Shown piece after piece: positions 28,031-60,293 of a DNA stretch of 64,000 nt (the stretch's first letter is position 1; each line of letters begins with the position of its first letter). The notes under the pieces were generated by a model. That model searched no databases. It worked only from the letters and a program-made list of their open reading frames with translations, and was not told the DNA's origin. The stretch lies in the IMG/VR virus record IMGVR_UViG_3300036770_003943, positions 1-64,000 of that record, one strand, 5' to 3'. A program made the translations under genes and the position numbers.

Positions 28031-28998
28031 TTGCAATACCTTTTTGCCATAAGTCGTATTTTAGTTGGACTATGTTCAACTGCTTGTAGTATACTATAGA
28101 CTGCGAACAGTCTTCCGTATTTAAGTACAGCGTCGCTTACATCTTTACAATCTTCCCATTCAGGAAAACTAGCACTCCAACCATAGTCTGCTGCTCGCAT
28201 AACCAAGTCTCGTCCAGCTAGATCCCTGTCAGGGATCACCACAGGTTCTATATTTAATTCTTCTATCAATTGTATTTGTCTTTCGCTGATATTATTACTG
28301 CCCACACTAACGCCTTGCGTAAATAAGGCGTCAAACTCCCCTTCACTGACTATGATATATTCACTATTTAAAGAAATATTGTCTAAGCCAAATACATACT
28401 CAGCCGGTGCTTTTCTTATATACTTCCTGACTTTTTCAGGAACCGTCCCGGCATATCTGGCCAGATAGCCGACTAGTTTATTTTCATAAGTATAAGGAAG
28501 AATTATGCGTTGATTCAAACCAAGATATTCATAATCTGTTTCAAGCCATACCGCCAAGTCAGATAGCTGTCTTTTTTCTAGATATTCTAATTTAACAGGA
28601 TCAGCAATTGGCCTGAACTCAAAGCCGGGATCAAAATCAGGCCAATCAGGTCGCCATTTAAATTCAGGTTCCCGCTTGACTAATTGTTCTAAGTCAGCTT
28701 GACTGAGTAGTTCTAAGGCTAGGCGTTGTATTTCGGCTTCGTCAAACCCTAGTTGCCGCATTAGCTTTCGTATCTTAAAACCCAAACTCCAACCAGGCAT
28801 CCATCCTGTTTTAAAATCACAGTTAAAACAGTGATAACTTAGTCCGCCATCTGGCTGATAGAGTATACCTCCTCTGCGTTTAGTATCTGGCCTGCTTTGG
28901 CCATTTACCACACACATGGGACAGTTTAAACTGATCCATCCTTTGGGACTAGGTTTTCCGTTTATTCTGCTTTTAAGCAGTGTTTGTAAGGCCATCAT
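28027..28998 (-). CDS. gp61: DNA primase (Zn finger plus TOPRIM)
   Basis: CPMC...HCFNC, R.I.P, EGEFDA, PDRD.AG, KD..D. Confidence 0.9.
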   Translation of the reverse strand: MMALQTLLKSRINGKPSPKGWISLNCPMCVVNGQSRPDTKRRGGILYQPDGGLSYHCFNCDFKTGWMPGWSLGFKIRKLMRQLGFDEAEIQRLALELLSQADLEQLVKREPEFKWRPDWPDFDPGFEFRPIADPVKLEYLEKRQLSDLAVWLETDYEYLGLNQRIILPYTYENKLVGYLARYAGTVPEKVRKYIRKAPAEYVFGLDNISLNSEYIIVSEGEFDALFTQGVSVGSNNISERQIQLIEELNIEPVVIPDRDLAGRDLVMRAADYGWSASFPEWEDCKDVSDAVLKYGRLFAVYSILQAVEHSPTKIRLMAKRYCK

Positions 28999-32442: not shown

Positions 32443-32943
32443 TTATATCATCTTCTCAATAGCAAGTACTTCTGGTAACTTGTTAGTTTCTTTGACAAAA
32501 TAAGCACACAGTGGTTTTTCGCCAGAATCCAATGGTACTGCTAATATGTGCCCGTGCTTTAACTTGGGAGTAAACCAACGTATGTCTTGAAAAATATTTA
32601 CTATTTCAAGTGGCTGAAAGTCAGGCCTAAAACTACTGATTGGGTTAAAAACAAATGCGCTAAACCCTCTATCATTTACATTCATAATAGGGACTATTTC
32701 AGGATCTCCATGATCCTTTTCTCCAATAACAATGTACCAGTCTAAGGGAACCTGTACAGTGTACTCACCAATTTTAAGTACAGCAGCAGGTGCGTGAAAT
32801 GTTTCCATAAAGATTAAAGGTACGAAATGGTAATCAACATTACGTGGATCAATCCAATCTAGCACTGCGTATCGAAGATCTTCAACTTCGTCGGGCAACT
32901 GATTTAGTTCAAATGCTGTATTGTCTACTGTTAGTATCTTCAT
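32443..32943 (-). CDS. Hypothetical all-beta protein, possibly degenerate Hint domain
   Basis: Strand pattern resembles Hint blocks; no catalytic Cys1 or terminal Asn. Confidence 0.4.
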   Translation of the reverse strand: MKILTVDNTAFELNQLPDEVEDLRYAVLDWIDPRNVDYHFVPLIFMETFHAPAAVLKIGEYTVQVPLDWYIVIGEKDHGDPEIVPIMNVNDRGFSAFVFNPISSFRPDFQPLEIVNIFQDIRWFTPKLKHGHILAVPLDSGEKPLCAYFVKETNKLPEVLAIEKMI

Positions 32944-34391
32944 TTATATTTTACTTTCTGTAAGTTGTAAGGATAACCTGCTTCCTCATAGTATTTCTTT
33001 CTTGTAGCAAGATGTCGCTTGCTAAACTTCGCACTGCTGGTTACGTCCCAAATTTCCACATGGTCCTTATCTTCTGCCCGTCGAATTCCACGGCCAATAC
33101 TTTGGATAACCCTAACAAAACTCTTTCCCGGCTCCAACAAAACAAGATTAAATATCCTAGGTATATTAATGCCTACAGCAGCAACACCATATGTGGCCAC
33201 GATAACTTTATTTTGACTAGTAGCTACTTCATCATATTCGTCTTTTCTATCTGAAGTTTTCATTGCACCGCTGACAAAACTACTTTCTGGAATACGTTCT
33301 ACTAACATTTCTCCGCATTTAACTCTGTCAACCAATACCAAAGTGTTTCCAGTCGAGCTAATGCGTTTGACAAAGTTTGCTATATGGTCGATTCGTTGTA
33401 TATTTGTGGTAAGAAATGTAAGCTCTTCTTGATAACTAGAATACTCTGCTGTATCCTGCAACTGAAGAATATTTACTTGACAGTTGGCTAATACTCCAAT
33501 ATCTTGTAAATCACGAGCAGCAATTTTATTTATTACTGGACCAATGGAGGCTAACAAGGTAACTTGTTCATAATTTTCTTTAGGGATGGTTCCAGTCAAC
33601 CCCCAGCGAATGGGCACATGAGCAAAACTAGAAGTTAATAGTTGTTTGAGTATATCAGCCTTAGCTTGATGACACTCATCCACTATCACTGCGATTACAT
33701 CCTGGGCAAAATCGTCAAGACTAACTTGACTTTCGCCGTTTTTAAATTTTTTTTCCATACTATTAAGGCTTTGCCAAGTACAAATAGTATGACGCTTATC
33801 TAACTCTTTCTTATCACCGAAGTAGACACCAACATCTAAGCCTAATAGGTCATAATCTTCGTAGGTCTGTTTTACTAAGTCTTTATTTGGCACTATAACT
33901 AGACTACGCCCATACTGTTCAACAGACTTACTTAATGTGGCAGTCATTACAGTTTTACCAGCTCCGGTGGCAATCTCTTGAACACACTGAGGTGCTTCTA
34001 AGAATTTGTTTATGGCCTCAATTTGATAGTCACGAAGGCTAACCGGCTCACCTGCCTTAGGATGTTTTTTTGGCCACTGTATATGACTGTGCATGTTTTC
34101 ATGCGCCGGTGTAAAAGAGAAATTATGATGAGGTCTGAGATCATCTATTGTTATATGATAACCGTGATCAATTATGCTAGGTAAAATTTCTTCTAGTAGA
34201 TTAAAAAAACTCGAACCTCCTAGGCTAAAGAAACTTACACAGCCATCCCATCGGCCTAACTTATAAGCAGGGCTGTGATAAGCCCATGGCTGGAAATACT
34301 TTAATTTCTTTTCTAGACTACGTCTAAGCCCTGCGTCTAATCCTATGAACTTTATGTTTACTTCATCTTTAATTTGTATAGTACATTCCAT
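32940..34391 (-). CDS. uvsW: SF2 DNA helicase UvsW
   Basis: LRDYQ, ATGAGKT, DECH, GLTGT, GINIP, QSIGRG.R. Confidence 0.95.
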   Translation of the reverse strand: MECTIQIKDEVNIKFIGLDAGLRRSLEKKLKYFQPWAYHSPAYKLGRWDGCVSFFSLGGSSFFNLLEEILPSIIDHGYHITIDDLRPHHNFSFTPAHENMHSHIQWPKKHPKAGEPVSLRDYQIEAINKFLEAPQCVQEIATGAGKTVMTATLSKSVEQYGRSLVIVPNKDLVKQTYEDYDLLGLDVGVYFGDKKELDKRHTICTWQSLNSMEKKFKNGESQVSLDDFAQDVIAVIVDECHQAKADILKQLLTSSFAHVPIRWGLTGTIPKENYEQVTLLASIGPVINKIAARDLQDIGVLANCQVNILQLQDTAEYSSYQEELTFLTTNIQRIDHIANFVKRISSTGNTLVLVDRVKCGEMLVERIPESSFVSGAMKTSDRKDEYDEVATSQNKVIVATYGVAAVGINIPRIFNLVLLEPGKSFVRVIQSIGRGIRRAEDKDHVEIWDVTSSAKFSKRHLATRKKYYEEAGYPYNLQKVKYK

Positions 34392-34421
34392 AGACTATTA
34401 TAGCATACCTGTCATAGTATA

Positions 34422-35306
34422 TCAACCTTGTTTAGGTTCAAAGTAAGTATTATACACCGTTGAATAGTTCATAATTAGAATCTCTGTTCCTTTACTTTTC
34501 TTCTTGTAAGTTTTAGGATTATTAATATGTCCTCGAGTAGCGGCACTACGGTAGACACTTTGCTTGTGCCATGTAAACTTATCTTCAGGATAAAAGTGAT
34601 GAAGGTCATCAAAATCGTAATAGCTTAAGGCAAATTTGCCTTTTATATTGGCTAAAACATCTGCTAGTTCTTGATGTTTTTCTCTTGGAAAGTCTTTGCT
34701 GTAGTAAAACTCCATATTGTAGTAAGGAGGATCAACATAGAAAAAAGTAGTTTCACTGTCATATTTTTTAATAAGATCAATACAGTCGATTTTTTCAACT
34801 TGATTTATGCTGGCTAATCGATGCGTGATTTTGTCTGTAGATAGTTTTTTAATCAGTGTATCGTATTTGCTAGGATATTTGCCACCTGCTTTTTGCTCAG
34901 TAAAGTAAGGTACATTGTTAATACTAAGGGCTGTGCCGGCAAAGACCTGCGTTTGAAGATAAAGATATTTCAAGGCTAGATCCAAATCGCCTAGTCTAAC
35001 TGTCTGCCAATCCAAGTCACCAAATAGCTCTTGTTGGTATTGTTTGTATAAAGCAAGATTGCTTTTAGGTGTTTGGATCATTAGGGATAATAAATCTTTT
35101 GATCTAGTTCGAAAGCATTCGAACACATTAGCCAGCAATGGATTAAAGTCATTATATACCTTAAATTTAGCTGACTCAACCTTTTGACTTTTGACTGAGA
35201 CCCACCCAGCACCACCAAACACTTCTATAAAATTATCAAAGCGATGTGGAAACAGTGGATCCATCCACTTAACGTGATGTGCTTTACCGCCAATATAAGG
35301 AAACAT
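34422..35306 (-). CDS. dam: DNA adenine methyltransferase (Dam/D12 class)
   Basis: FPYIGGK, EVFGGAG (motif I), YVDPPY (motif IV); target specificity not determinable. Confidence 0.9.
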   Translation of the reverse strand: MFPYIGGKAHHVKWMDPLFPHRFDNFIEVFGGAGWVSVKSQKVESAKFKVYNDFNPLLANVFECFRTRSKDLLSLMIQTPKSNLALYKQYQQELFGDLDWQTVRLGDLDLALKYLYLQTQVFAGTALSINNVPYFTEQKAGGKYPSKYDTLIKKLSTDKITHRLASINQVEKIDCIDLIKKYDSETTFFYVDPPYYNMEFYYSKDFPREKHQELADVLANIKGKFALSYYDFDDLHHFYPEDKFTWHKQSVYRSAATRGHINNPKTYKKKSKGTEILIMNYSTVYNTYFEPKQG

Positions 35307-35344
35307 AGTGTATTATATACTTCTAATAAGTAAAAATCAATCTT

Positions 35345-35749
35345 TTATTTATCGGCTAGCCAAGCTGCGAAATCTTCGCAGTTGTTCATGGTTAGTGGAA
35401 TGTAATCTTCTGGGCCGTTCTCGAGTTTAATAAAATGTTTTTCTTTTAATTCTTGTATATAATCTAAAATTTCTTCTAGACTGATATTACTGATCCATTC
35501 ACTAAGACCAGCTTCGTTACTCAATCTGCGAGACTTAAAATGTCGTTTTATCTTTTTTTCGGCTTCTTTGACGTCTATATCTTCACCAAGATATATACAA
35601 ATAAACTTTTCTGTCCATACCGGACCTACTGCTTGTTGATAAGCAGCAAGCCTTGTTCTTATTTTATCTAAAGCAGATATACCTACCTTATAGTGAGTAG
35701 CGTTGACGACTCCCGGGCAAGTTCTGATATAAAGAGCGTAGGGTCTCAT
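35345..35749 (-). CDS. T5orf172/MUG113 (GIY-YIG superfamily) nuclease-like protein
   Basis: LYI...YKVGIS.....RL..YQ...E.E..IK..F...R....EW. Confidence 0.7.
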   Translation of the reverse strand: MRPYALYIRTCPGVVNATHYKVGISALDKIRTRLAAYQQAVGPVWTEKFICIYLGEDIDVKEAEKKIKRHFKSRRLSNEAGLSEWISNISLEEILDYIQELKEKHFIKLENGPEDYIPLTMNNCEDFAAWLADK

Positions 35750-36837
35750 TGTACAGGAAAGGTACTTTCTGGTTGTGCTAGTCGAAACTTTGAGCCATGC
35801 TTTAGATAGGTTAAAATTAAGCCGCTGGTTACTACGACTGGGTGCGCCGCAAGACTGCCAAAGTGACTTAAAAATTGCTCTTTCAATCTAATATGAACTT
35901 TCTCACTTTGACCATATACGTTAGTAAGTATGTTTCCAAATTCTAAATCAAAGTCACGTGATAACATTTGACCTGTTTGTAATTCTGTCTGTTGATAGAG
36001 CCTTGCCATGGCCAACATCATAATACCACGTACTTCTTCCATGGGCCAAGTATCCCGATGAAACTTTAAGCTACGAGCAAGATATACACCTTTAATTCCA
36101 CTGCTAGCTTGAACTAGATCATAAGCACCATACAAATGTTCAATGTGACTGATATCACCGGCCTTATCACTGGTTCTCTTAATCTGACAGTGGTTACTGT
36201 CTACAATGTTTTGAATAATAACAGGTTCGGTTATTCCGCATTCAACTGAAACCATGTGTGCGTCATAATTACCACAAATTCGTTTACCAAATCTATTAAT
36301 AGTCAAAAAGCTGCGACCGGCTTTAAGTATAAGAATCTTCTCAGCTTCTTCTAAACTATGTTCATCATCAACGTCAGCTTCAGTATACCATATAGGCAAG
36401 TGACTCCATCCTTGCCGTTCGCATTCTGCCCTAGTATGACTTCCATCCCATAACAGAAAAGTTTCGCTTTTAGGATCTTTAATAGCACATGGAACAATAA
36501 TCATGTCTGGTTCAAACATACCTTCGATCTTAGCTACATGATTGGGACTTAGATCACGTTGAAATATTGGATTAATTCCAACTGAATCCATATGAGCCCA
36601 AGTAAATTTAGGTATATTTAAATTTCTAGGATCTACACTACAGCGAGGTTTTGGCGGAGGACCCAAAACTGCGTCTATTACTTCATTTATATCTTTACTG
36701 GGTATAATCCCGGAACTATAATTTTTGGCCATTTCTCTTAAATCAATGGCCGCATCTTCGACATCAAAGGGTATTGAGAATTTACTCAGAACGTCCGTGA
36801 TACGCTGCTCTTTTTGTTTGGTTTTGCTAAGTTTCAT
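35746..36837 (-). CDS. ParB/Sulfiredoxin-like (DGQH-type) domain protein
   Basis: INP.FQRDL....V.KI...F, FLLWDGSHT. Confidence 0.65.
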   Translation of the reverse strand: MKLSKTKQKEQRITDVLSKFSIPFDVEDAAIDLREMAKNYSSGIIPSKDINEVIDAVLGPPPKPRCSVDPRNLNIPKFTWAHMDSVGINPIFQRDLSPNHVAKIEGMFEPDMIIVPCAIKDPKSETFLLWDGSHTRAECERQGWSHLPIWYTEADVDDEHSLEEAEKILILKAGRSFLTINRFGKRICGNYDAHMVSVECGITEPVIIQNIVDSNHCQIKRTSDKAGDISHIEHLYGAYDLVQASSGIKGVYLARSLKFHRDTWPMEEVRGIMMLAMARLYQQTELQTGQMLSRDFDLEFGNILTNVYGQSEKVHIRLKEQFLSHFGSLAAHPVVVTSGLILTYLKHGSKFRLAQPESTFPVQ

Positions 36838-36838
36838 A

Positions 36839-38941
36839 TTAGAATACTTTGTTAAACATTACACCAGCACCAGTAGCAGTATTACCTGCTTGCCCTGCTA
36901 CATTATATTGTCTGGCCAGGTTCACTGTCAATCTTGCGTTTTGATTATTAATCACAGTGTAACCTAATACTAGATCCAAAGGACGAATATCTGATTTCAG
37001 ATTCACAATTTCCTTAGTTACAATAGGATCCGCACTAACTGTACCATCAGCCAATTCAGTAAACTTGTAATCTGTTACTGCGCTCACAGTAGCTGAACCA
37101 TTCTTAATGGCAACCGGACTAACTAAGCTAAGACTAACTTGATCTCGAACACTATCTTTGAATACTATATTGTGATGCGCTATACCAACCTTCCAAGTCT
37201 GGCTAGTAATAGCCCCATTGAATTGGACAAGACTACCACTTAGGTTACTGACCTGCGTAACAGCCAAACCATAATGGCCAAACAAACTTGTATCACCAAA
37301 CTGTCGGGCTAGCCCTAATTGGGCATAACTAGTGCTGCTGTCACCATAGGCTAGACTACCTGCTCCGTGATTACCCAAAAAGCCTGAACGTTCAGACAAG
37401 CCTCCGAGTTGGAAACTCGCTGTAGTTGAACCCATATAGTAATCTACTTGGTTAGCTAAACCGTTATCAGACTTCATTAATTTTACTGAGTAGTCAGAGC
37501 CTGTGGGCAATACAACTTCACTATAGTTATAGGGTGTTAAGGCTAACCAAGCACTGCCGTATTGGTAAGTTTGTAGTTTATTTACAGCAGTAGCTTTAGT
37601 CAAATCAACTGCGTAATGACGCCCAATTTCATCTAAAGTCATTGTATTCTTTAATACATAACTGTTGGATAATCCTGTGTTAACTGAATTTACTGTACCT
37701 GTTCCAGCAATGCTAGAACCTGCTACTAGCCCTTGACTAGGCATGGCCATTTTTAATGTACCTGTTGGCTTAGTTGCCTGGCTGAAGTTGACTAACCCAT
37801 ATCCATAAACTTCATCAACGCCAGGGGCACCTAAATCTGTAGCAGTAGTCTTAACTAGACTGACAATCTGTGCCGCACTAAGTTGTGGCCAAACCTGTTT
37901 GATTAGTGCAACACCCCCACTGACATAGGCAGCGGCCGGACTTGTACCAGAGACATAACTTGTCACACTTCCTGGAATAATCTGGTTTGGAGTTGCGGTG
38001 GGAATATTTTCTCCTGGTGCTACTACGTAAAAATCTTTTACACTGTATTTGTCGGCACAAACTGTGCCTTGTACGTCAGAACAAAAGCCCCCAGCCCGGT
38101 TGCTAAAACTGCTAATTACATTCTTGTTATTCACACTACCTACAATCAGCATCCTGCCTCCTAACATAAGGTTACCTACTGAATCGGTTTTAGTAGCATA
38201 AGCACCCGGATATTGGCTATAAGCCAAGCCTTGGTTGCCTGCCGCGGCAACTATTACCATGGTCTTACTAGCATTGGCAAAATTTGCCAAGTCTTGGGCC
38301 GAGTTACTGTATAAGTCTGTATACGGAGCAGGAGCCTTGTATACTCCTGGAGACATTTTTATTACTCCACGCTGAAACGCAGTGTCATAAGTGGCGCCTA
38401 AACTTAGATTTGCTACAGTAGCACCGTTAGCTTCGGCCCAAGTTAATGCTTGATTGATGCCGTTTGTGCTAATACCATTAGTAACAGGAACCCATTTTTT
38501 CTGGTAATTATTCCAAACTAACCCTTGTGCGACCTGAGCCAGTAATAACTTAGCTCCAGGTGCTACGCCTACCGTTCCAATATTATCCAACTTACCTGCC
38601 GCCACTGCCGCCATCTGCGTTCCATGTGTACTCCAGCTAGCTGTGAAGAAAAGATTTGAACGAAAATTATTTGGATTAAGGCGAGTGTTTTCAGCTACAA
38701 TTTCACTAAAGTTTCTAAATCCTAATACCTGACCTCTAAGGTCATTATGAGTAATATCAAACCCACTGTCTAGTATAGCAATCTTAACACCGGTTCCAGT
38801 AATACCTCGACTCCATGCTTCTGTTACACCGGTTTGGTTTAACACCGATGTGCTTAGTGATTCTTTATTTGCCTGAGCTAGCACACTTTGACTAATTGCC
38901 AAAGCTATCGATACGCTAAGAACTTTTGCTTTAAATTTCAT
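36839..38941 (-). CDS. Secreted subtilisin-like (S8) serine protease with C-terminal beta-rich domain
   Basis: Signal peptide; AILDSG (Asp), HGTQMA (His), AAAGN, SGTS.AA..VSG (Ser); terminal Phe. Confidence 0.92.
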   Translation of the reverse strand: MKFKAKVLSVSIALAISQSVLAQANKESLSTSVLNQTGVTEAWSRGITGTGVKIAILDSGFDITHNDLRGQVLGFRNFSEIVAENTRLNPNNFRSNLFFTASWSTHGTQMAAVAAGKLDNIGTVGVAPGAKLLLAQVAQGLVWNNYQKKWVPVTNGISTNGINQALTWAEANGATVANLSLGATYDTAFQRGVIKMSPGVYKAPAPYTDLYSNSAQDLANFANASKTMVIVAAAGNQGLAYSQYPGAYATKTDSVGNLMLGGRMLIVGSVNNKNVISSFSNRAGGFCSDVQGTVCADKYSVKDFYVVAPGENIPTATPNQIIPGSVTSYVSGTSPAAAYVSGGVALIKQVWPQLSAAQIVSLVKTTATDLGAPGVDEVYGYGLVNFSQATKPTGTLKMAMPSQGLVAGSSIAGTGTVNSVNTGLSNSYVLKNTMTLDEIGRHYAVDLTKATAVNKLQTYQYGSAWLALTPYNYSEVVLPTGSDYSVKLMKSDNGLANQVDYYMGSTTASFQLGGLSERSGFLGNHGAGSLAYGDSSTSYAQLGLARQFGDTSLFGHYGLAVTQVSNLSGSLVQFNGAITSQTWKVGIAHHNIVFKDSVRDQVSLSLVSPVAIKNGSATVSAVTDYKFTELADGTVSADPIVTKEIVNLKSDIRPLDLVLGYTVINNQNARLTVNLARQYNVAGQAGNTATGAGVMFNKVF

Positions 38942-38982: not shown

Positions 38983-40062
38983 CTATGCTTCCTTACGCTT
39001 AAGGATTGTAGTTTCTGCGAGACGTCTCCAATTGCTAGGACTAAGTTTACGTAAGTCCGCAATCTTAAGCACTGTACGCAAACTGAGTTCACGCAAGCGA
39101 CTACGCTCTGTCCAAACAAAGTCAACAATTTCCTGATCTGCACCATCTTCAAAATTGTACGAGTTCAACATGCCATCACGCACAATCTGCTTGATACGCA
39201 AAAACTTGTCACGCATAGTGTCAAGTGTAAGATCCAGATAGTGACAACGACTTTCTAATGCGTCCAAATGGTCCTTGAGTTTCTTGCTACGAACATGCTC
39301 AAACTTAATGTTAGTAATAAAAATCACACTACCTTTGAACTCAAACTTGTCGGGCACACCTTCACGACGCAACATGCTGGAGTCTGTGTTCCAACTAATG
39401 GTACGCTTCTTGCTTGAATCCAATGCTGCCTTGAGGATGTTAAGTGACAAGTCGTCAAGCAAAATGCTGTCGCAGTCATCAAACACTAGAACATTGTTTT
39501 TGTCTGCGTATTGAAACAACTTGCAGTAGAGTCCAATAGCACTCATAGCACCTTTGACTACTTCAAAGCGATTTTTACGCTGAGCCATTTTGTCAAAGAG
39601 GCTGGCCTGTTCAAGTACCTTCTCAACACCAAAACTCTTGCCAACTCCTGGGGGACCTGACACAATCATTGCACGAACGGCACCTGTAGTTGCACCTTCT
39701 GCCATTTCATCTAGAATGTCAAAACGCTCACGAATTCGTTCAATCGCTTGTTCTTCTGTTTCTGTATATGTTGCGGGTTCGACTGCCTTGAGCATTTGAA
39801 AGACATTATCGTCTTCTTTGTTAGCACGATTGCGTTCACTGTCTGACATGTCTACGATACTTTGTCCGCTCAACGTAATATCCTCACGTGAATTAATTTT
39901 GATTTTGACTTCTGCTGGGAAGCCAGGAAAGTTTCCTTCGTTAGCTACCTTAATAACAAAGCCACCTTTTGCGCTATCTTTGATATCGCCAAGTAAGCGA
40001 AAAGTTTGACCACGAACATCTATGTTACGATAACTGCCACGAAGAACGGTAACTTGAGCCAT
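38983..40062 (-). CDS. AAA+ ATPase
   Basis: GPPGVGKS Walker A, VLVFDDCD Walker B, VIFITN sensor 1, LESRC arginine finger. Confidence 0.88.
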   Translation of the reverse strand: MAQVTVLRGSYRNIDVRGQTFRLLGDIKDSAKGGFVIKVANEGNFPGFPAEVKIKINSREDITLSGQSIVDMSDSERNRANKEDDNVFQMLKAVEPATYTETEEQAIERIRERFDILDEMAEGATTGAVRAMIVSGPPGVGKSFGVEKVLEQASLFDKMAQRKNRFEVVKGAMSAIGLYCKLFQYADKNNVLVFDDCDSILLDDLSLNILKAALDSSKKRTISWNTDSSMLRREGVPDKFEFKGSVIFITNIKFEHVRSKKLKDHLDALESRCHYLDLTLDTMRDKFLRIKQIVRDGMLNSYNFEDGADQEIVDFVWTERSRLRELSLRTVLKIADLRKLSPSNWRRLAETTILKRKEA

Positions 40063-40125
40063 TTTCAAAACTCCTGTTTTGTTTAACTATAGAGCTAGTA
40101 TAACACTCTAGCCAATTTGTGTCAA

Positions 40126-60155: not shown

Positions 60156-60293
60156 ATGCACATTTATAGAATAAAAAATTTAGTTAATGGCAAGATATAT
60201 ATAGGCCAAACTGTACAAAAAAATCCTAAGATGAGATGGTGCGCCCATATCAATAATGCTAGAAAAGGAGGCGACAGTTTAACGCTGTTGTAA
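60156..60293 (+). pseudogene. Truncated GIY-YIG homing endonuclease (45 codons)
   Basis: MHIYRIKNLVNGKIYIGQT.....MRW..H; stops before the catalytic Glu. Confidence 0.8.

What the first reader, a model, noticed from the sequence alone, without database searches (positions are those of the whole stretch)
34422..36837. ParB-like (DGSH) + T5orf172 nuclease + adenine methyltransferase trio
Three consecutive genes encode a ParB/Srx-like domain with FQR and DGSHT (variant of DGQHR), an ATGA-coupled GIY-YIG-superfamily nuclease, and a Dam-class MTase with its own TTGATT-17-TATAAT promoter. ParB-DGQHR domains, T5orf172 nucleases and MTases are recurrent parts of DNA-modification and conflict systems. 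Inference: a phage-encoded restriction-like or competitor-exclusion module, with early independent MTase expression protecting self DNA.
Basis: inference. Interest (0 to 1): 0.6.

Follow-up and report, generated by a model that had tools for sequence, protein, structure and literature searches.

The report
Swappable ParB-fold plus nuclease phage cassette
A giant freshwater phage carries a tightly coupled gene pair, a ParB-like nucleotide-switch protein plus a tiny DNA-cutting enzyme, that related phages swap for alternative versions at the same spot, with a DNA methylase as an optional but recurrent neighbour; it looks like an undescribed two-part nuclease used in conflicts between genomes.

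Summary
Three consecutive minus-strand genes encode a ParB/Srx-fold protein (363 aa; FQRD and DGSHT motifs), an ATGA-coupled T5orf172/MUG113 protein (134 aa) and a D12 N6-adenine methyltransferase (294 aa) preceded by TTGATT-17-TATAAT.

The functional unit is the pair, not the trio. In 45 of 45 viral loci that have a relative of the ParB-like gene plus downstream DNA, the small nuclease gene follows directly. The junction overlaps or sits within 1 nt in 40 of 45, down to 29% identity. None of these 45 loci has the methylase.

The pair is accessory. In 48 of 57 related loci the flanking AAA and helicase genes are adjacent, with no pair. Related phages hold divergent ParB-like genes at the same spot, some coupled to an HNH nuclease instead of T5orf172. 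One phage pair with 85% identical flanks differs exactly by this cassette.

Starting from the methylase reverses the picture. Seven of nine distinct informative methylase loci lie next to a ParB-like gene (six of the seven with a small gene abutting it), in three flank contexts and on either side.

Best reading: a mobile, NTP-switch-controlled two-subunit nuclease resembling a split GmrSD, with a facultative methylase partner. This is a new variant of a known kind. All biochemistry is inferred.

The parts
35746..36837 (-). ParB/Srx-fold protein of 363 aa. The N-terminal 73 residues are unassigned, residues 74-186 form the ParB-CTPase-type fold, and residues 187-363 form a helical domain. It is a divergent relative of Pfam DUF6551.
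   Evidence: AF2 pLDDT 96.2. PadC Z 10.5, KorB 9.5, Srx 9.2. Atlas clusters named ParB/Sulfiredoxin, one with DUF6551 in 88% of members, TM 0.64/0.72 over 255 residues. 34 of 70 remote homologues hit DUF6551. Invariant motifs: FQRD, WDGxHT, N181, K185.
35345..35749 (-). Minimal T5orf172/MUG113 (GIY-YIG clan) protein of 134 aa, the putative nuclease subunit.
   Evidence: Pfam MUG113 1.7e-5 and T5orf172 9.6e-5, both above the gathering cut-offs. PHROG 681 endonuclease 1.2e-6. The nearest Atlas feature clusters carry T5orf172. Family invariants are Y7 K21 G23 I24 R33 Y37 E64 E84 W85.
35746..35749 (-). ATGA stop/start overlap that couples the two genes.
   Evidence: Sequence. The junction is overlapping or within 1 nt in 40 of 45 related loci.
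34422..35306 (-). D12-class N6-adenine DNA methyltransferase of 294 aa, a facultative neighbour of the cassette.
   Evidence: PF02086 4.1e-17. FGGAG and DPPY motifs. It is the only D12 hit in the 232-kb record. 13 viral loci have homologues at 70-78% identity.
36902..36931 (-). Perfect sigma-70-like site TTGACA-18-TATAAT, 65 nt upstream of the ParB-like ATG, inside the 3' end of the S8 protease gene.
   Evidence: 12 of 12 matches. This is a consensus match only; no transcript data exist.
35312..35340 (-). Promoter-like TTGATT-17-TATAAT upstream of the methylase. The -10 box ends 5 nt before the ATG.
   Evidence: The same geometry recurs at 9 long ORFs in the record against about 0.5 expected.
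36839..38941 (-). Upstream flank: secreted S8 subtilase of 700 aa, itself an accessory insert in the same slot.
   Evidence: PF00082 2.7e-40. Present between AAA and helicase in only 6 of 57 related loci.
32940..34391 (-). Downstream flank: superfamily-2 helicase of 483 aa, the conserved boundary of the slot.
   Evidence: ResIII/Helicase_C and PHROG 16. At least 593 relatives in viral contigs.
38983..40068 (-). Conserved AAA protein (PHROG 1250), the other boundary of the slot.
   Evidence: It lies directly next to the helicase (gap 86-1789 bp) in 48 of 57 related loci.

Best explanation
Genes 36837..35345 form a mobile, accessory two-gene cassette. It encodes a ParB-CTPase-fold (DUF6551-type) nucleotide-binding subunit, translationally coupled to a minimal nuclease subunit. 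Here the nuclease belongs to the T5orf172/GIY-YIG superfamily; sister cassettes use HNH. The cassette sits in a hyperplastic slot between the conserved AAA and helicase genes of a T4-like jumbo phage. Inferred mechanism: the ParB-fold subunit binds an NTP and DNA and supplies the targeting or licensing that the 134-aa nuclease lacks. The two would then act as one NTP-gated endonuclease, a split analogue of GmrS/GmrD-type enzymes with a different nuclease fold. Inferred role: a genome-conflict function, meaning cleavage of competing or cassette-less phage DNA (marker exclusion or homing) or of other foreign DNA. The D12 methylase at 35306..34422 is a facultative partner. It is absent from most cassettes, but where it exists it is almost always beside one. 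Plausibly it marks DNA in concert with the ParB-fold protein or shields the phage's own genome. Shown here: the fold, the family links, the coupling, the sporadic distribution, the cassette swaps, the methylase adjacency and purifying selection. Inferred only: NTP binding, complex formation, nuclease activity, the target and any effect of methylation.
For: Fold and family. Phage ParB-fold/DUF6551 proteins bind NTP in vitro (bioRxiv 10.1101/2025.10.10.680097). The same survey reports ParB-fold fusions to HNH and to N6_N4 methylases, which independently ties these three activities together. Pair as a unit: a profile of the small protein finds it directly downstream in 45 of 45 loci, with coupled junctions in 40 of 45. 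Nuclease displacement: the small partner is HNH (PF01844, 6e-6) in L057 and L066, and by similarity in L079 and L081. HNH-partnered ParB-like proteins form one clade with 98/87 support. Cassette swap: L057 and L058 are 85% identical in DNA on both flanks but cannot be aligned exactly over the pair. L062 keeps the window's S8, methylase and helicase flanks (helicase 78% identical) around a ParB-like gene so divergent that tblastn misses it. Accessory status: AAA is directly next to the helicase in 48 of 57 loci, and a pair sits between them in 6. Functional constraint: dN/dS is 0.02-0.17 for both genes, and no broken copy was seen. Methylase link: 7 of 9 distinct methylase loci have a ParB-like neighbour against 9 of 79 helicase-anchored loci (Fisher p = 5e-5, or 0.02 when collapsed to three flank contexts). 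The pair lies downstream of the methylase in L064 and upstream in L066. A second, unrelated methylase (N6_N4) lies beside ParB-like genes in L009 and L062. T5orf172 domains are proven nucleases in phage ICP1 (PMC8263062).
Against: No biochemical or expression data exist for any member. The window's protein itself matches no ParB, DUF6551, DndB or GmrSD_N model. The P-motif arginine that the preprint found essential for NTP binding is a threonine here (DGSHT), so NTP binding is not assured. Only 4 of 20 small-protein relatives reach MUG113 at E <= 0.01. The helical-domain match to BrxU is weak (Z 4.7). Methylase adjacency could simply reflect accessory genes piling into the same few hyperplastic regions, and the loci are not phylogenetically independent. 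Strong conservation (60-80% identity across many contigs) is less typical of fast-evolving conflict genes.
Confidence: 0.55

Rival explanations
1. This is a classical restriction-modification-like trio. The ParB-like and T5orf172 proteins cut unmethylated DNA, and the D12 methylase protects the phage's own genome.
For: The methylase is adjacent to ParB-like/nuclease cassettes in 7 of 9 methylase loci. In the own record and in G003 the only methylase of these two families is the one next to the pair. ParB-fold fusions to methylases and to HNH are known.
Against: None of 45 loci with the pair has the D12 methylase. Four of five large contigs with the standard pair show neither a D12 nor an N6_N4 methylase in 110-184 kb. 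A methylation-blocked nuclease would then attack its own genome. Cassettes of very different sequence, presumably with different specificity, sit next to methylases that are 70-78% identical. GATC is not depleted (O/E 1.09).
Confidence: 0.15
2. This is a purely selfish two-part homing endonuclease. The small nuclease cuts the empty or rival allele of the AAA-helicase slot during co-infection, the ParB-like protein gives site recognition, and the methylase is a passenger in a recombination hot spot.
For: The distribution is sporadic within a syntenic intergenic slot. Swaps are exact and in place. Both partner folds (GIY-YIG clan, HNH) are the classical free-standing homing nucleases of T4-like phages, and T5orf172 nuclease genes mark boundaries of genetic exchange in ICP1 (PMC10448857). 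The DNA just downstream of the nuclease gene is hypervariable.
Against: No homing endonuclease is known to need a roughly 360-aa ParB-fold partner. Both genes are intact and under strong purifying selection in every copy seen, whereas homing genes often decay. The same pair also sits next to a ligase or in other contexts, so no single target site is evident. The methylase enrichment is left unexplained.
Confidence: 0.2
3. This is a housekeeping recombination or replication nuclease, such as a junction-resolving or concatemer-processing enzyme loaded by a ParB-like clamp. That would fit its place among UvsX, helicase, primase and ligase genes.
For: The neighbours are UvsX, helicases and primase in the window and ATP-dependent ligase in the marine clade. 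A recombination role was proposed for T5orf172 proteins of jumbo phages (PMC7824862). No RuvC or endonuclease VII was found in the 232-kb record. Purifying selection is strong.
Against: The pair is absent from 48 of 57 related AAA-helicase loci and from the closest helicase relatives L072, L073 and L085, so it is not a core function. It is replaced in place by very distant versions with another nuclease fold. The record is only 65% complete, so the absence of a resolvase is not shown.
Confidence: 0.1

Closest known systems
Pfam DUF6551 (PF20188), phage ParB-CTPase-fold proteins
   Same: The whole-protein architecture is the same: a ParB/Srx fold followed by a helical domain (TM 0.64/0.72, rmsd 2.3 A over 255 residues to a cluster in which 88% of members carry DUF6551). 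34 of 70 remote homologues found with the family profile hit DUF6551, down to E 7e-30. The wider family consensus is DGQHT. A phage DUF6551 protein bound NTP in DRaCALA assays.
   Different: The window's protein does not reach the Pfam model at E 0.01. It has about 70 extra N-terminal residues. The strict coupling to a T5orf172 or HNH gene is not described for DUF6551, and was not seen in the distant branch I examined (Sinorhizobium phage Phosso, L050, L052).
GmrSD / BrxU / SspE type IV restriction enzymes (DUF262 ParB-like NTPase plus DUF1524 His-Me nuclease; GmrS and GmrD are separate polypeptides in E. coli CT596, from my own knowledge)
   Same: A ParB-fold nucleotide-binding module with a DGxxR-type motif is joined to a nuclease module, with a helical region after the ParB fold. 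BrxU is the best match of residues 187-363 (Z 4.7), and SspE matches the N-domain at Z 3.4.
   Different: The nuclease fold differs (GIY-YIG clan, or a small stand-alone HNH, rather than DUF1524). There is no DUF262 model hit. The system is encoded by a lytic jumbo phage rather than a bacterial defence island. Dependence on DNA modification is unknown. The structural similarity of the helical part is weak.
DndB / DGQHR-domain proteins (and DpdB, from my own knowledge)
   Same: A ParB-fold ATP/GTP-binding protein with QR and DGQH(R/T) motifs works alongside DNA-modifying enzymes. 7 of 70 remote homologues give weak DndB hits.
   Different: No dnd or dpd genes are nearby. The motif ends in Thr, not Arg. 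The partner is a nuclease.
T5orf172-domain nucleases of phage ICP1 (Odn/Gp88 and T5orf172 homing endonucleases)
   Same: The same nuclease domain family with the catalytic Arg and Glu retained. They are phage-encoded, used in conflicts between mobile elements, and lie at boundaries of genetic exchange.
   Different: The ICP1 enzymes carry their own DNA-binding domain in the same polypeptide. Here the protein is essentially the bare domain (134 aa) and is always coupled to a separate ParB-fold protein.
ParB-methylase and ParB-HNH fusion proteins, and the phage 'ParB-terminase large subunit' locus
   Same: ParB fold, adenine methylase and HNH nuclease recur together in phages and prophages.
   Different: Here they are separate genes. 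The methylase is D12 class rather than N6_N4. The locus is about 9 kb from the terminase gene and lies in a replication module.

Membership tests
ParB/Srx (ParB-CTPase) fold superfamily | The characteristic alpha/beta fold of roughly 100 residues | tested here: met
   Residues 74-186: PadC Z 10.5 (rmsd 2.2 A, 97 aligned), KorB 9.5, SbnI 9.3, SerK 9.3, Srx 9.2, pNOB8 ParB 8.5. Foldseek probability 1.00. Model pLDDT 96.2.
ParB/Srx (ParB-CTPase) fold superfamily | Box I (QxR-type) and Box II (GxxR P-motif) nucleotide-binding motifs | tested here: inconclusive
   The profile alignment to Noc places FQR on FQPR and DGHHT on GERRW (E 0.25). Q93, R94, D131, G132 and H134 are at least 90% conserved over 102 sequences. 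However, the position of the P-motif Arg is an invariant Thr (T135).
ParB/Srx (ParB-CTPase) fold superfamily | NTP binding or hydrolysis | not testable with these tools
   Known only by analogy with a DUF6551 phage protein in bioRxiv 10.1101/2025.10.10.680097.
Pfam DUF6551 (PF20188) | Score above the model's gathering cut-off (26.8 bits) | tested here: not met
   No hit at E <= 0.01 for the window's protein. 34 of 70 remote homologues do hit. Structural TM is 0.64/0.72 to a DUF6551 cluster. It is a divergent relative, not a model-level member.
DndB / DGQHR domain | DGQHR motif and dnd (or dpd) gene neighbourhood | tested here: not met
   The motif is DGSHT. The neighbours are an S8 protease, a nuclease, a methylase and a helicase.
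GmrSD-family type IV restriction enzyme | DUF262 (GmrSD_N) domain | tested here: not met
   No PF03235 hit for the window's protein. Only 2 of 70 remote homologues hit, at 1.4e-4.
GmrSD-family type IV restriction enzyme | DUF1524 His-Me finger nuclease domain | tested here: not met
   The partner here is T5orf172/MUG113. Sister cassettes have a small HNH (PF01844), not DUF1524.
GmrSD-family type IV restriction enzyme | Cleavage dependent on modified DNA | not testable with these tools
T5orf172 / MUG113 (GIY-YIG clan) | Pfam score above gathering cut-off | tested here: met
   MUG113 25.7 bits against 22.3; T5orf172 23.3 bits against 20. Only 4 and 3 of 20 relatives reach E 0.01, so the branch is divergent.
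T5orf172 / MUG113 (GIY-YIG clan) | Conserved catalytic Arg and Glu of the GIY-YIG core | tested here: met
   R33 and E84 (in the SEW motif) are invariant in 20 sequences down to 19% identity, together with Y7 and K21-x-G23-I24. The assignment of catalytic roles is by analogy to Gp88.
D12-class N6-adenine DNA methyltransferase | PF02086 above cut-off, plus the SAM motif FxGxG and the catalytic DPPY | tested here: met
   63.2 bits against 22. FGGAG and DPPY are read in the translation.
Dam (GATC) equivalog, TIGR00571 | Score above 114.85 bits | tested here: not met
   57.4 bits. The target sequence is unknown. GATC O/E is 1.09.
Type II restriction-modification system | Nuclease and cognate methylase inherited together | tested here: not met
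   None of 45 loci with the pair has the methylase. 2 of 9 methylase loci have no ParB-like gene nearby.
Free-standing homing endonuclease gene | Sporadic presence in an otherwise syntenic intergenic site | tested here: met
   A pair lies between AAA and helicase in 6 of 57 loci, while the two genes are adjacent in 48. There is an exact in-place swap between L057 and L058.
Free-standing homing endonuclease gene | Nuclease and DNA-binding domain in one polypeptide; cleavage of the empty allele | tested here: not met
   The 134-aa protein is essentially the nuclease domain alone (domain spans residues 7-100). Cleavage of the empty allele is not testable here.

The most novel reading that the evidence does not exclude
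DUF6551-type ParB-fold proteins are NTP-driven DNA clamps or loaders. They deliver interchangeable minimal nucleases (T5orf172 or HNH), and sometimes methylases, to DNA. On this reading they form a previously unrecognised, widespread class of modular two-subunit nucleases that large phages exchange as cassettes to exclude one another during co-infection. The adjacent orphan methylase would serve as immunity or as a second client of the same clamp.
Probability: 0.3. Interest if true: 0.75.

Novelty: new variant of a known kind. Interest (0 to 1): 0.62.

Why it matters
ParB-CTPase-fold proteins outside chromosome segregation are a current open topic, and what phage DUF6551 proteins do is unknown. 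This locus assigns one large branch of them a concrete, testable partner: a minimal nuclease that evolution has replaced with another nuclease fold while keeping the two-gene architecture. That replacement is a strong genomic argument that the pair is a nuclease machine. The locus also shows clean, datable cassette swaps between otherwise near-identical jumbo-phage genomes, which is a useful natural experiment on phage-versus-phage conflict. Finally, it points to a methylase whose position depends on the cassette. The family is abundant in aquatic viromes: 253 word-search hits, and 310 representatives at E <= 0.001.

Tried and rejected
1. A first AlphaFold2 run on 30 close homologues gave pLDDT 51 and was unusable. 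It was replaced by a run on a 102-sequence alignment.

2. Direct sequence searches of the 363-aa protein gave nothing usable. PDB returned only a spurious L37 hit. The isolate-phage collection returned only Sinorhizobium phage Phosso at 23% identity. Megablast found no match.

3. Complex prediction on the ParB-like and T5orf172 proteins gave no verdict (scores 0.52, 0.00, 0.00). This counts neither for nor against binding.

4. My interim view that the pair is a core replication-module gene rested on 45 of 45 co-occurrence and identity similar to the helicase. I rejected it after anchoring on the helicase, which showed that most relatives lack the pair.

5. My interim view that the methylase is an unrelated moron rested on 0 of 45 loci. 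I softened it after anchoring on the methylase.

6. The Holliday-junction-resolvase idea is demoted. No RuvC or endonuclease VII was found, but the record is 65% complete and the pair is accessory.

7. A profile search of PDB with the small protein's family gave only chance hits.

8. I found no T5orf172 partner next to the distant DUF6551-like genes in L050, L052 and L054.

9. The marine-type ParB-like protein has no relative among isolated phages, so no cultured model is at hand.

10. A narrow HNH profile found no ParB-HNH fusion among the stored homologues.

Full report
**What is there.** The window is the first 64 kb of a 231,776-bp IMG/VR virus record that CheckV rates 65% complete. It is a roughly 38% GC, T4-like jumbo myovirus. 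It encodes UvsX, a DnaB-like helicase, a primase, ribonucleotide reductase, a large terminase and a tail sheath.

The finding covers three consecutive minus-strand genes:
- a 363-aa protein at 36837..35746;
- a 134-aa protein at 35749..35345, whose ATG overlaps the first gene's TGA as ATGA;
- a 294-aa protein at 35306..34422.

Upstream lie an AAA protein (PHROG 1250) and a secreted S8 subtilase. Downstream lies a superfamily-2 helicase.

**Checking the three domain calls.** The 363-aa protein hits nothing in Pfam, PHROGs, PADLOC or NCBIfam. The word search nevertheless found 253 relatives, mostly 60-80% identical proteins from metagenomes. A profile of 30 of them gave only a weak PDB hit, to the ParB-family protein Noc (E 0.25). 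That alignment places FQR on Box I and DGHHT on the GERR P-motif.

A profile search of 1.84 billion representatives gave 310 hits at E <= 0.001. Of 70 of these, 34 match Pfam DUF6551, 7 match DndB, 2 match GmrSD_N and 1 matches ParB_N.

With a 102-sequence alignment, AlphaFold2 gave pLDDT 96.2. Residues 74-186 superpose on ParB/Srx-fold proteins: PadC at Z 10.5, KorB at 9.5, and SbnI, SerK and sulfiredoxin at about 9. The full length matches viral Atlas clusters named ParB/Sulfiredoxin, one of which carries DUF6551 in 88% of members (TM 0.64/0.72). The C-terminal helical domain has only a weak best match, to the GmrSD enzyme BrxU (Z 4.7).

FQRD, WDGxHT, N181 and K185 are invariant down to 30% identity. 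The protein is a divergent DUF6551-type ParB-fold protein in which the P-motif Arg is a Thr.

The 134-aa protein passes the Pfam cut-offs of MUG113 and T5orf172. It retains Y7, K21-x-G-I, R33 and E84 across its family.

The 294-aa protein is a D12-class N6-adenine methylase with FGGAG and DPPY motifs. It scores below the Dam equivalog cut-off.

The TTGATT-17-TATAAT site exists, but it ends 5 nt before the ATG. The pair has a perfect consensus site of its own at 36931..36902.

Near-identical contigs in aquaculture and freshwater metagenomes from other studies bridge the gene junctions.

**The pair is the unit.** Forty-six viral loci encode a relative of the ParB-like protein, at 29-76% identity. 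A profile of the small protein finds it immediately downstream in all 45 loci that have downstream DNA. In 40 of these the junction is ATGA, TAATG or a 1-nt gap. In two loci a second T5orf172 paralogue is wedged between the two genes. Both genes are single-copy in the record and evolve under dN/dS of 0.02-0.17. None of the 45 loci contains the methylase, and five large related contigs have no homologue of it.

**The pair is accessory and swappable.** I anchored a search on the helicase, which has at least 593 relatives, of which 80 loci were kept. Among the 57 loci where both AAA and helicase are seen:
- AAA lies directly next to the helicase in 48;
- only the S8 protease lies between them in 3;
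- a ParB-like gene lies between them in 6.

The ParB-like genes in this slot belong to several distant subtypes. Some are coupled to a T5orf172-like gene (L075, L083). Others are coupled to a 141-162-aa HNH endonuclease (L079, L081, and L057 and L066 elsewhere). Some have unclassified small partners (L080, L088).

L057 and L058 are 85% identical in DNA on both sides but cannot be aligned exactly over the pair. One carries ParB-like plus HNH and the other carries ParB-like plus T5orf172. L062 keeps the window's S8, methylase and helicase flanks around a ParB-like gene that only the broad profile detects.

On a tree of the ParB-like proteins, the HNH-partnered ones form one supported clade, so each cassette is inherited as a unit. 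Displacement of one nuclease fold by another within a fixed two-gene architecture is the strongest genomic argument that the small partner's job is DNA cleavage, and that the ParB-fold protein works with it.

**The methylase is facultative but not random.** Thirteen viral loci carry the methylase at 70-78% identity. After removing duplicates and truncated loci, nine distinct informative loci remain, counting the window. Seven of these have a ParB-like gene within about 2.5 kb. They fall into three different flank contexts:
- next to the helicase (the window and L062);
- next to a conserved 278-285-aa protein (L057, L058, L060);
- next to an ATP-dependent ligase (L064, L066).

In the last pair the cassette sits downstream of the methylase in L064 and upstream in L066, while the flanks are 72-75% identical.

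The comparison with helicase-anchored loci (9 of 79 with a ParB-like gene) gives Fisher p = 5e-5, or p = 0.02 if the seven are collapsed to three contexts. These loci are not independent, so the numbers are only indicative.

On the ParB-like tree, methylase adjacency appears on seven separate tips.

An unrelated N6_N4 methylase, preceded by a 208-aa or 214-aa ORF, lies beside ParB-like genes in L009 and L062. In G003 and in the window's own record, the only methylase of these two families is the one next to the pair. A recent survey reports ParB-fold fusions to N6_N4 methylases in phages and to HNH in bacteria. This independently links the three activities.

**Interpretation.** The best-supported reading is a mobile two-subunit nuclease cassette. 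A DUF6551-type ParB-fold NTP switch provides DNA engagement and licensing for a minimal nuclease. This is analogous to split GmrS/GmrD but uses other nuclease folds.

Its sporadic, swap-prone distribution between conserved genes points to a conflict or selfish role, such as exclusion of rival phage genomes, homing, or restriction of foreign DNA. It does not point to a core replication role.

The methylase is an optional associate. It could shield the phage's own DNA, be a second client of the ParB-fold protein, or be a passenger in the same hyperplastic region. A strict restriction-modification model fits poorly, because most cassettes have no methylase.

NTP binding, complex formation, nuclease activity, the target and any effect of methylation are all inferred. 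The complex prediction gave no verdict.

**Comparison and novelty.** The parts are known kinds: ParB-CTPase fold/DUF6551, the T5orf172 nuclease domain and a D12 methylase. Two searches of the held paper library (DUF6551; T5orf172 with ParB) returned no description of this combination:
- obligate coupling of a DUF6551-type protein to a bare nuclease domain;
- interchange of T5orf172 and HNH partners;
- in-place cassette swapping in jumbo phages;
- recurrent methylase adjacency.

I rate it a new variant of a known kind.

Noticed in passing
whole record G000; in the window at 35340..35312, 34425..34397, and upstream of the ATGs at 28998 and 14987: Sigma-70-like promoters whose -10 box ends only 3-9 nt before the ATG of long ORFs. 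There are 9 such ORFs of at least 150 aa, against about 0.5 expected by chance. This suggests leaderless or near-leaderless mRNAs in this phage.
   Followed up: partly
whole record G000 (231,776 bp): TGCA is strongly depleted (O/E 0.25) and CGCG is depleted (O/E 0.40), while GATC is not (1.09). This may reflect restriction pressure from the host on TGCA sites.
   Followed up: no
window 36839-38941 (-): A 700-aa secreted S8 subtilase with a signal peptide. Only residues 49-382 are assigned by Pfam, and the C-terminal 300 residues or so are unassigned. It is itself an accessory insert in the AAA-helicase slot, present there in 6 of 57 related loci.
   Followed up: partly
window 60156-60281 (+): A GIY-YIG half-domain (model positions 2-41, 29 bits) in a 65-aa open frame between two tail-sheath-like genes. 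It is probably a remnant of a homing endonuclease.
   Followed up: no
L002, L004, L009, L017, L024 downstream of the T5orf172 gene: The DNA immediately downstream of the nuclease gene is hypervariable among relatives. It holds PstS plus a phosphate porin, a GroEL-like chaperonin, an AAA_5 protein plus a DUF2201 metallopeptidase/VWA protein, or an N6_N4 methylase.
   Followed up: partly
L027:7059-7625 and L032:5368-5865: A second gene is inserted between the ParB-like gene and its usual T5orf172 partner. In L027 it encodes a 188-aa protein that hits MUG113 at 1.5e-7. The 165-aa L032 insert was not scanned.
   Followed up: partly
L066:2556-3254: An additional 232-aa HNH endonuclease gene (PF01844, 5e-13) overlaps the start of the ParB-like gene, so this cassette has HNH genes on both sides.
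   Followed up: no
L057/L058:4155-4991, L060:4089-4946: A conserved 278-285-aa protein with no Pfam hit always sits directly upstream of the D12 methylase in one group of phages (48-92% identical among them). It could be a partner of the methylase.
   Followed up: no
runs X2, X3 (aquaculture) and X4 (freshwater): Near-identical copies of the whole stretch occur in metagenomes from other studies besides the subsurface sample that probably yielded the contig. The phage is therefore widespread in fresh water.
   Followed up: partly
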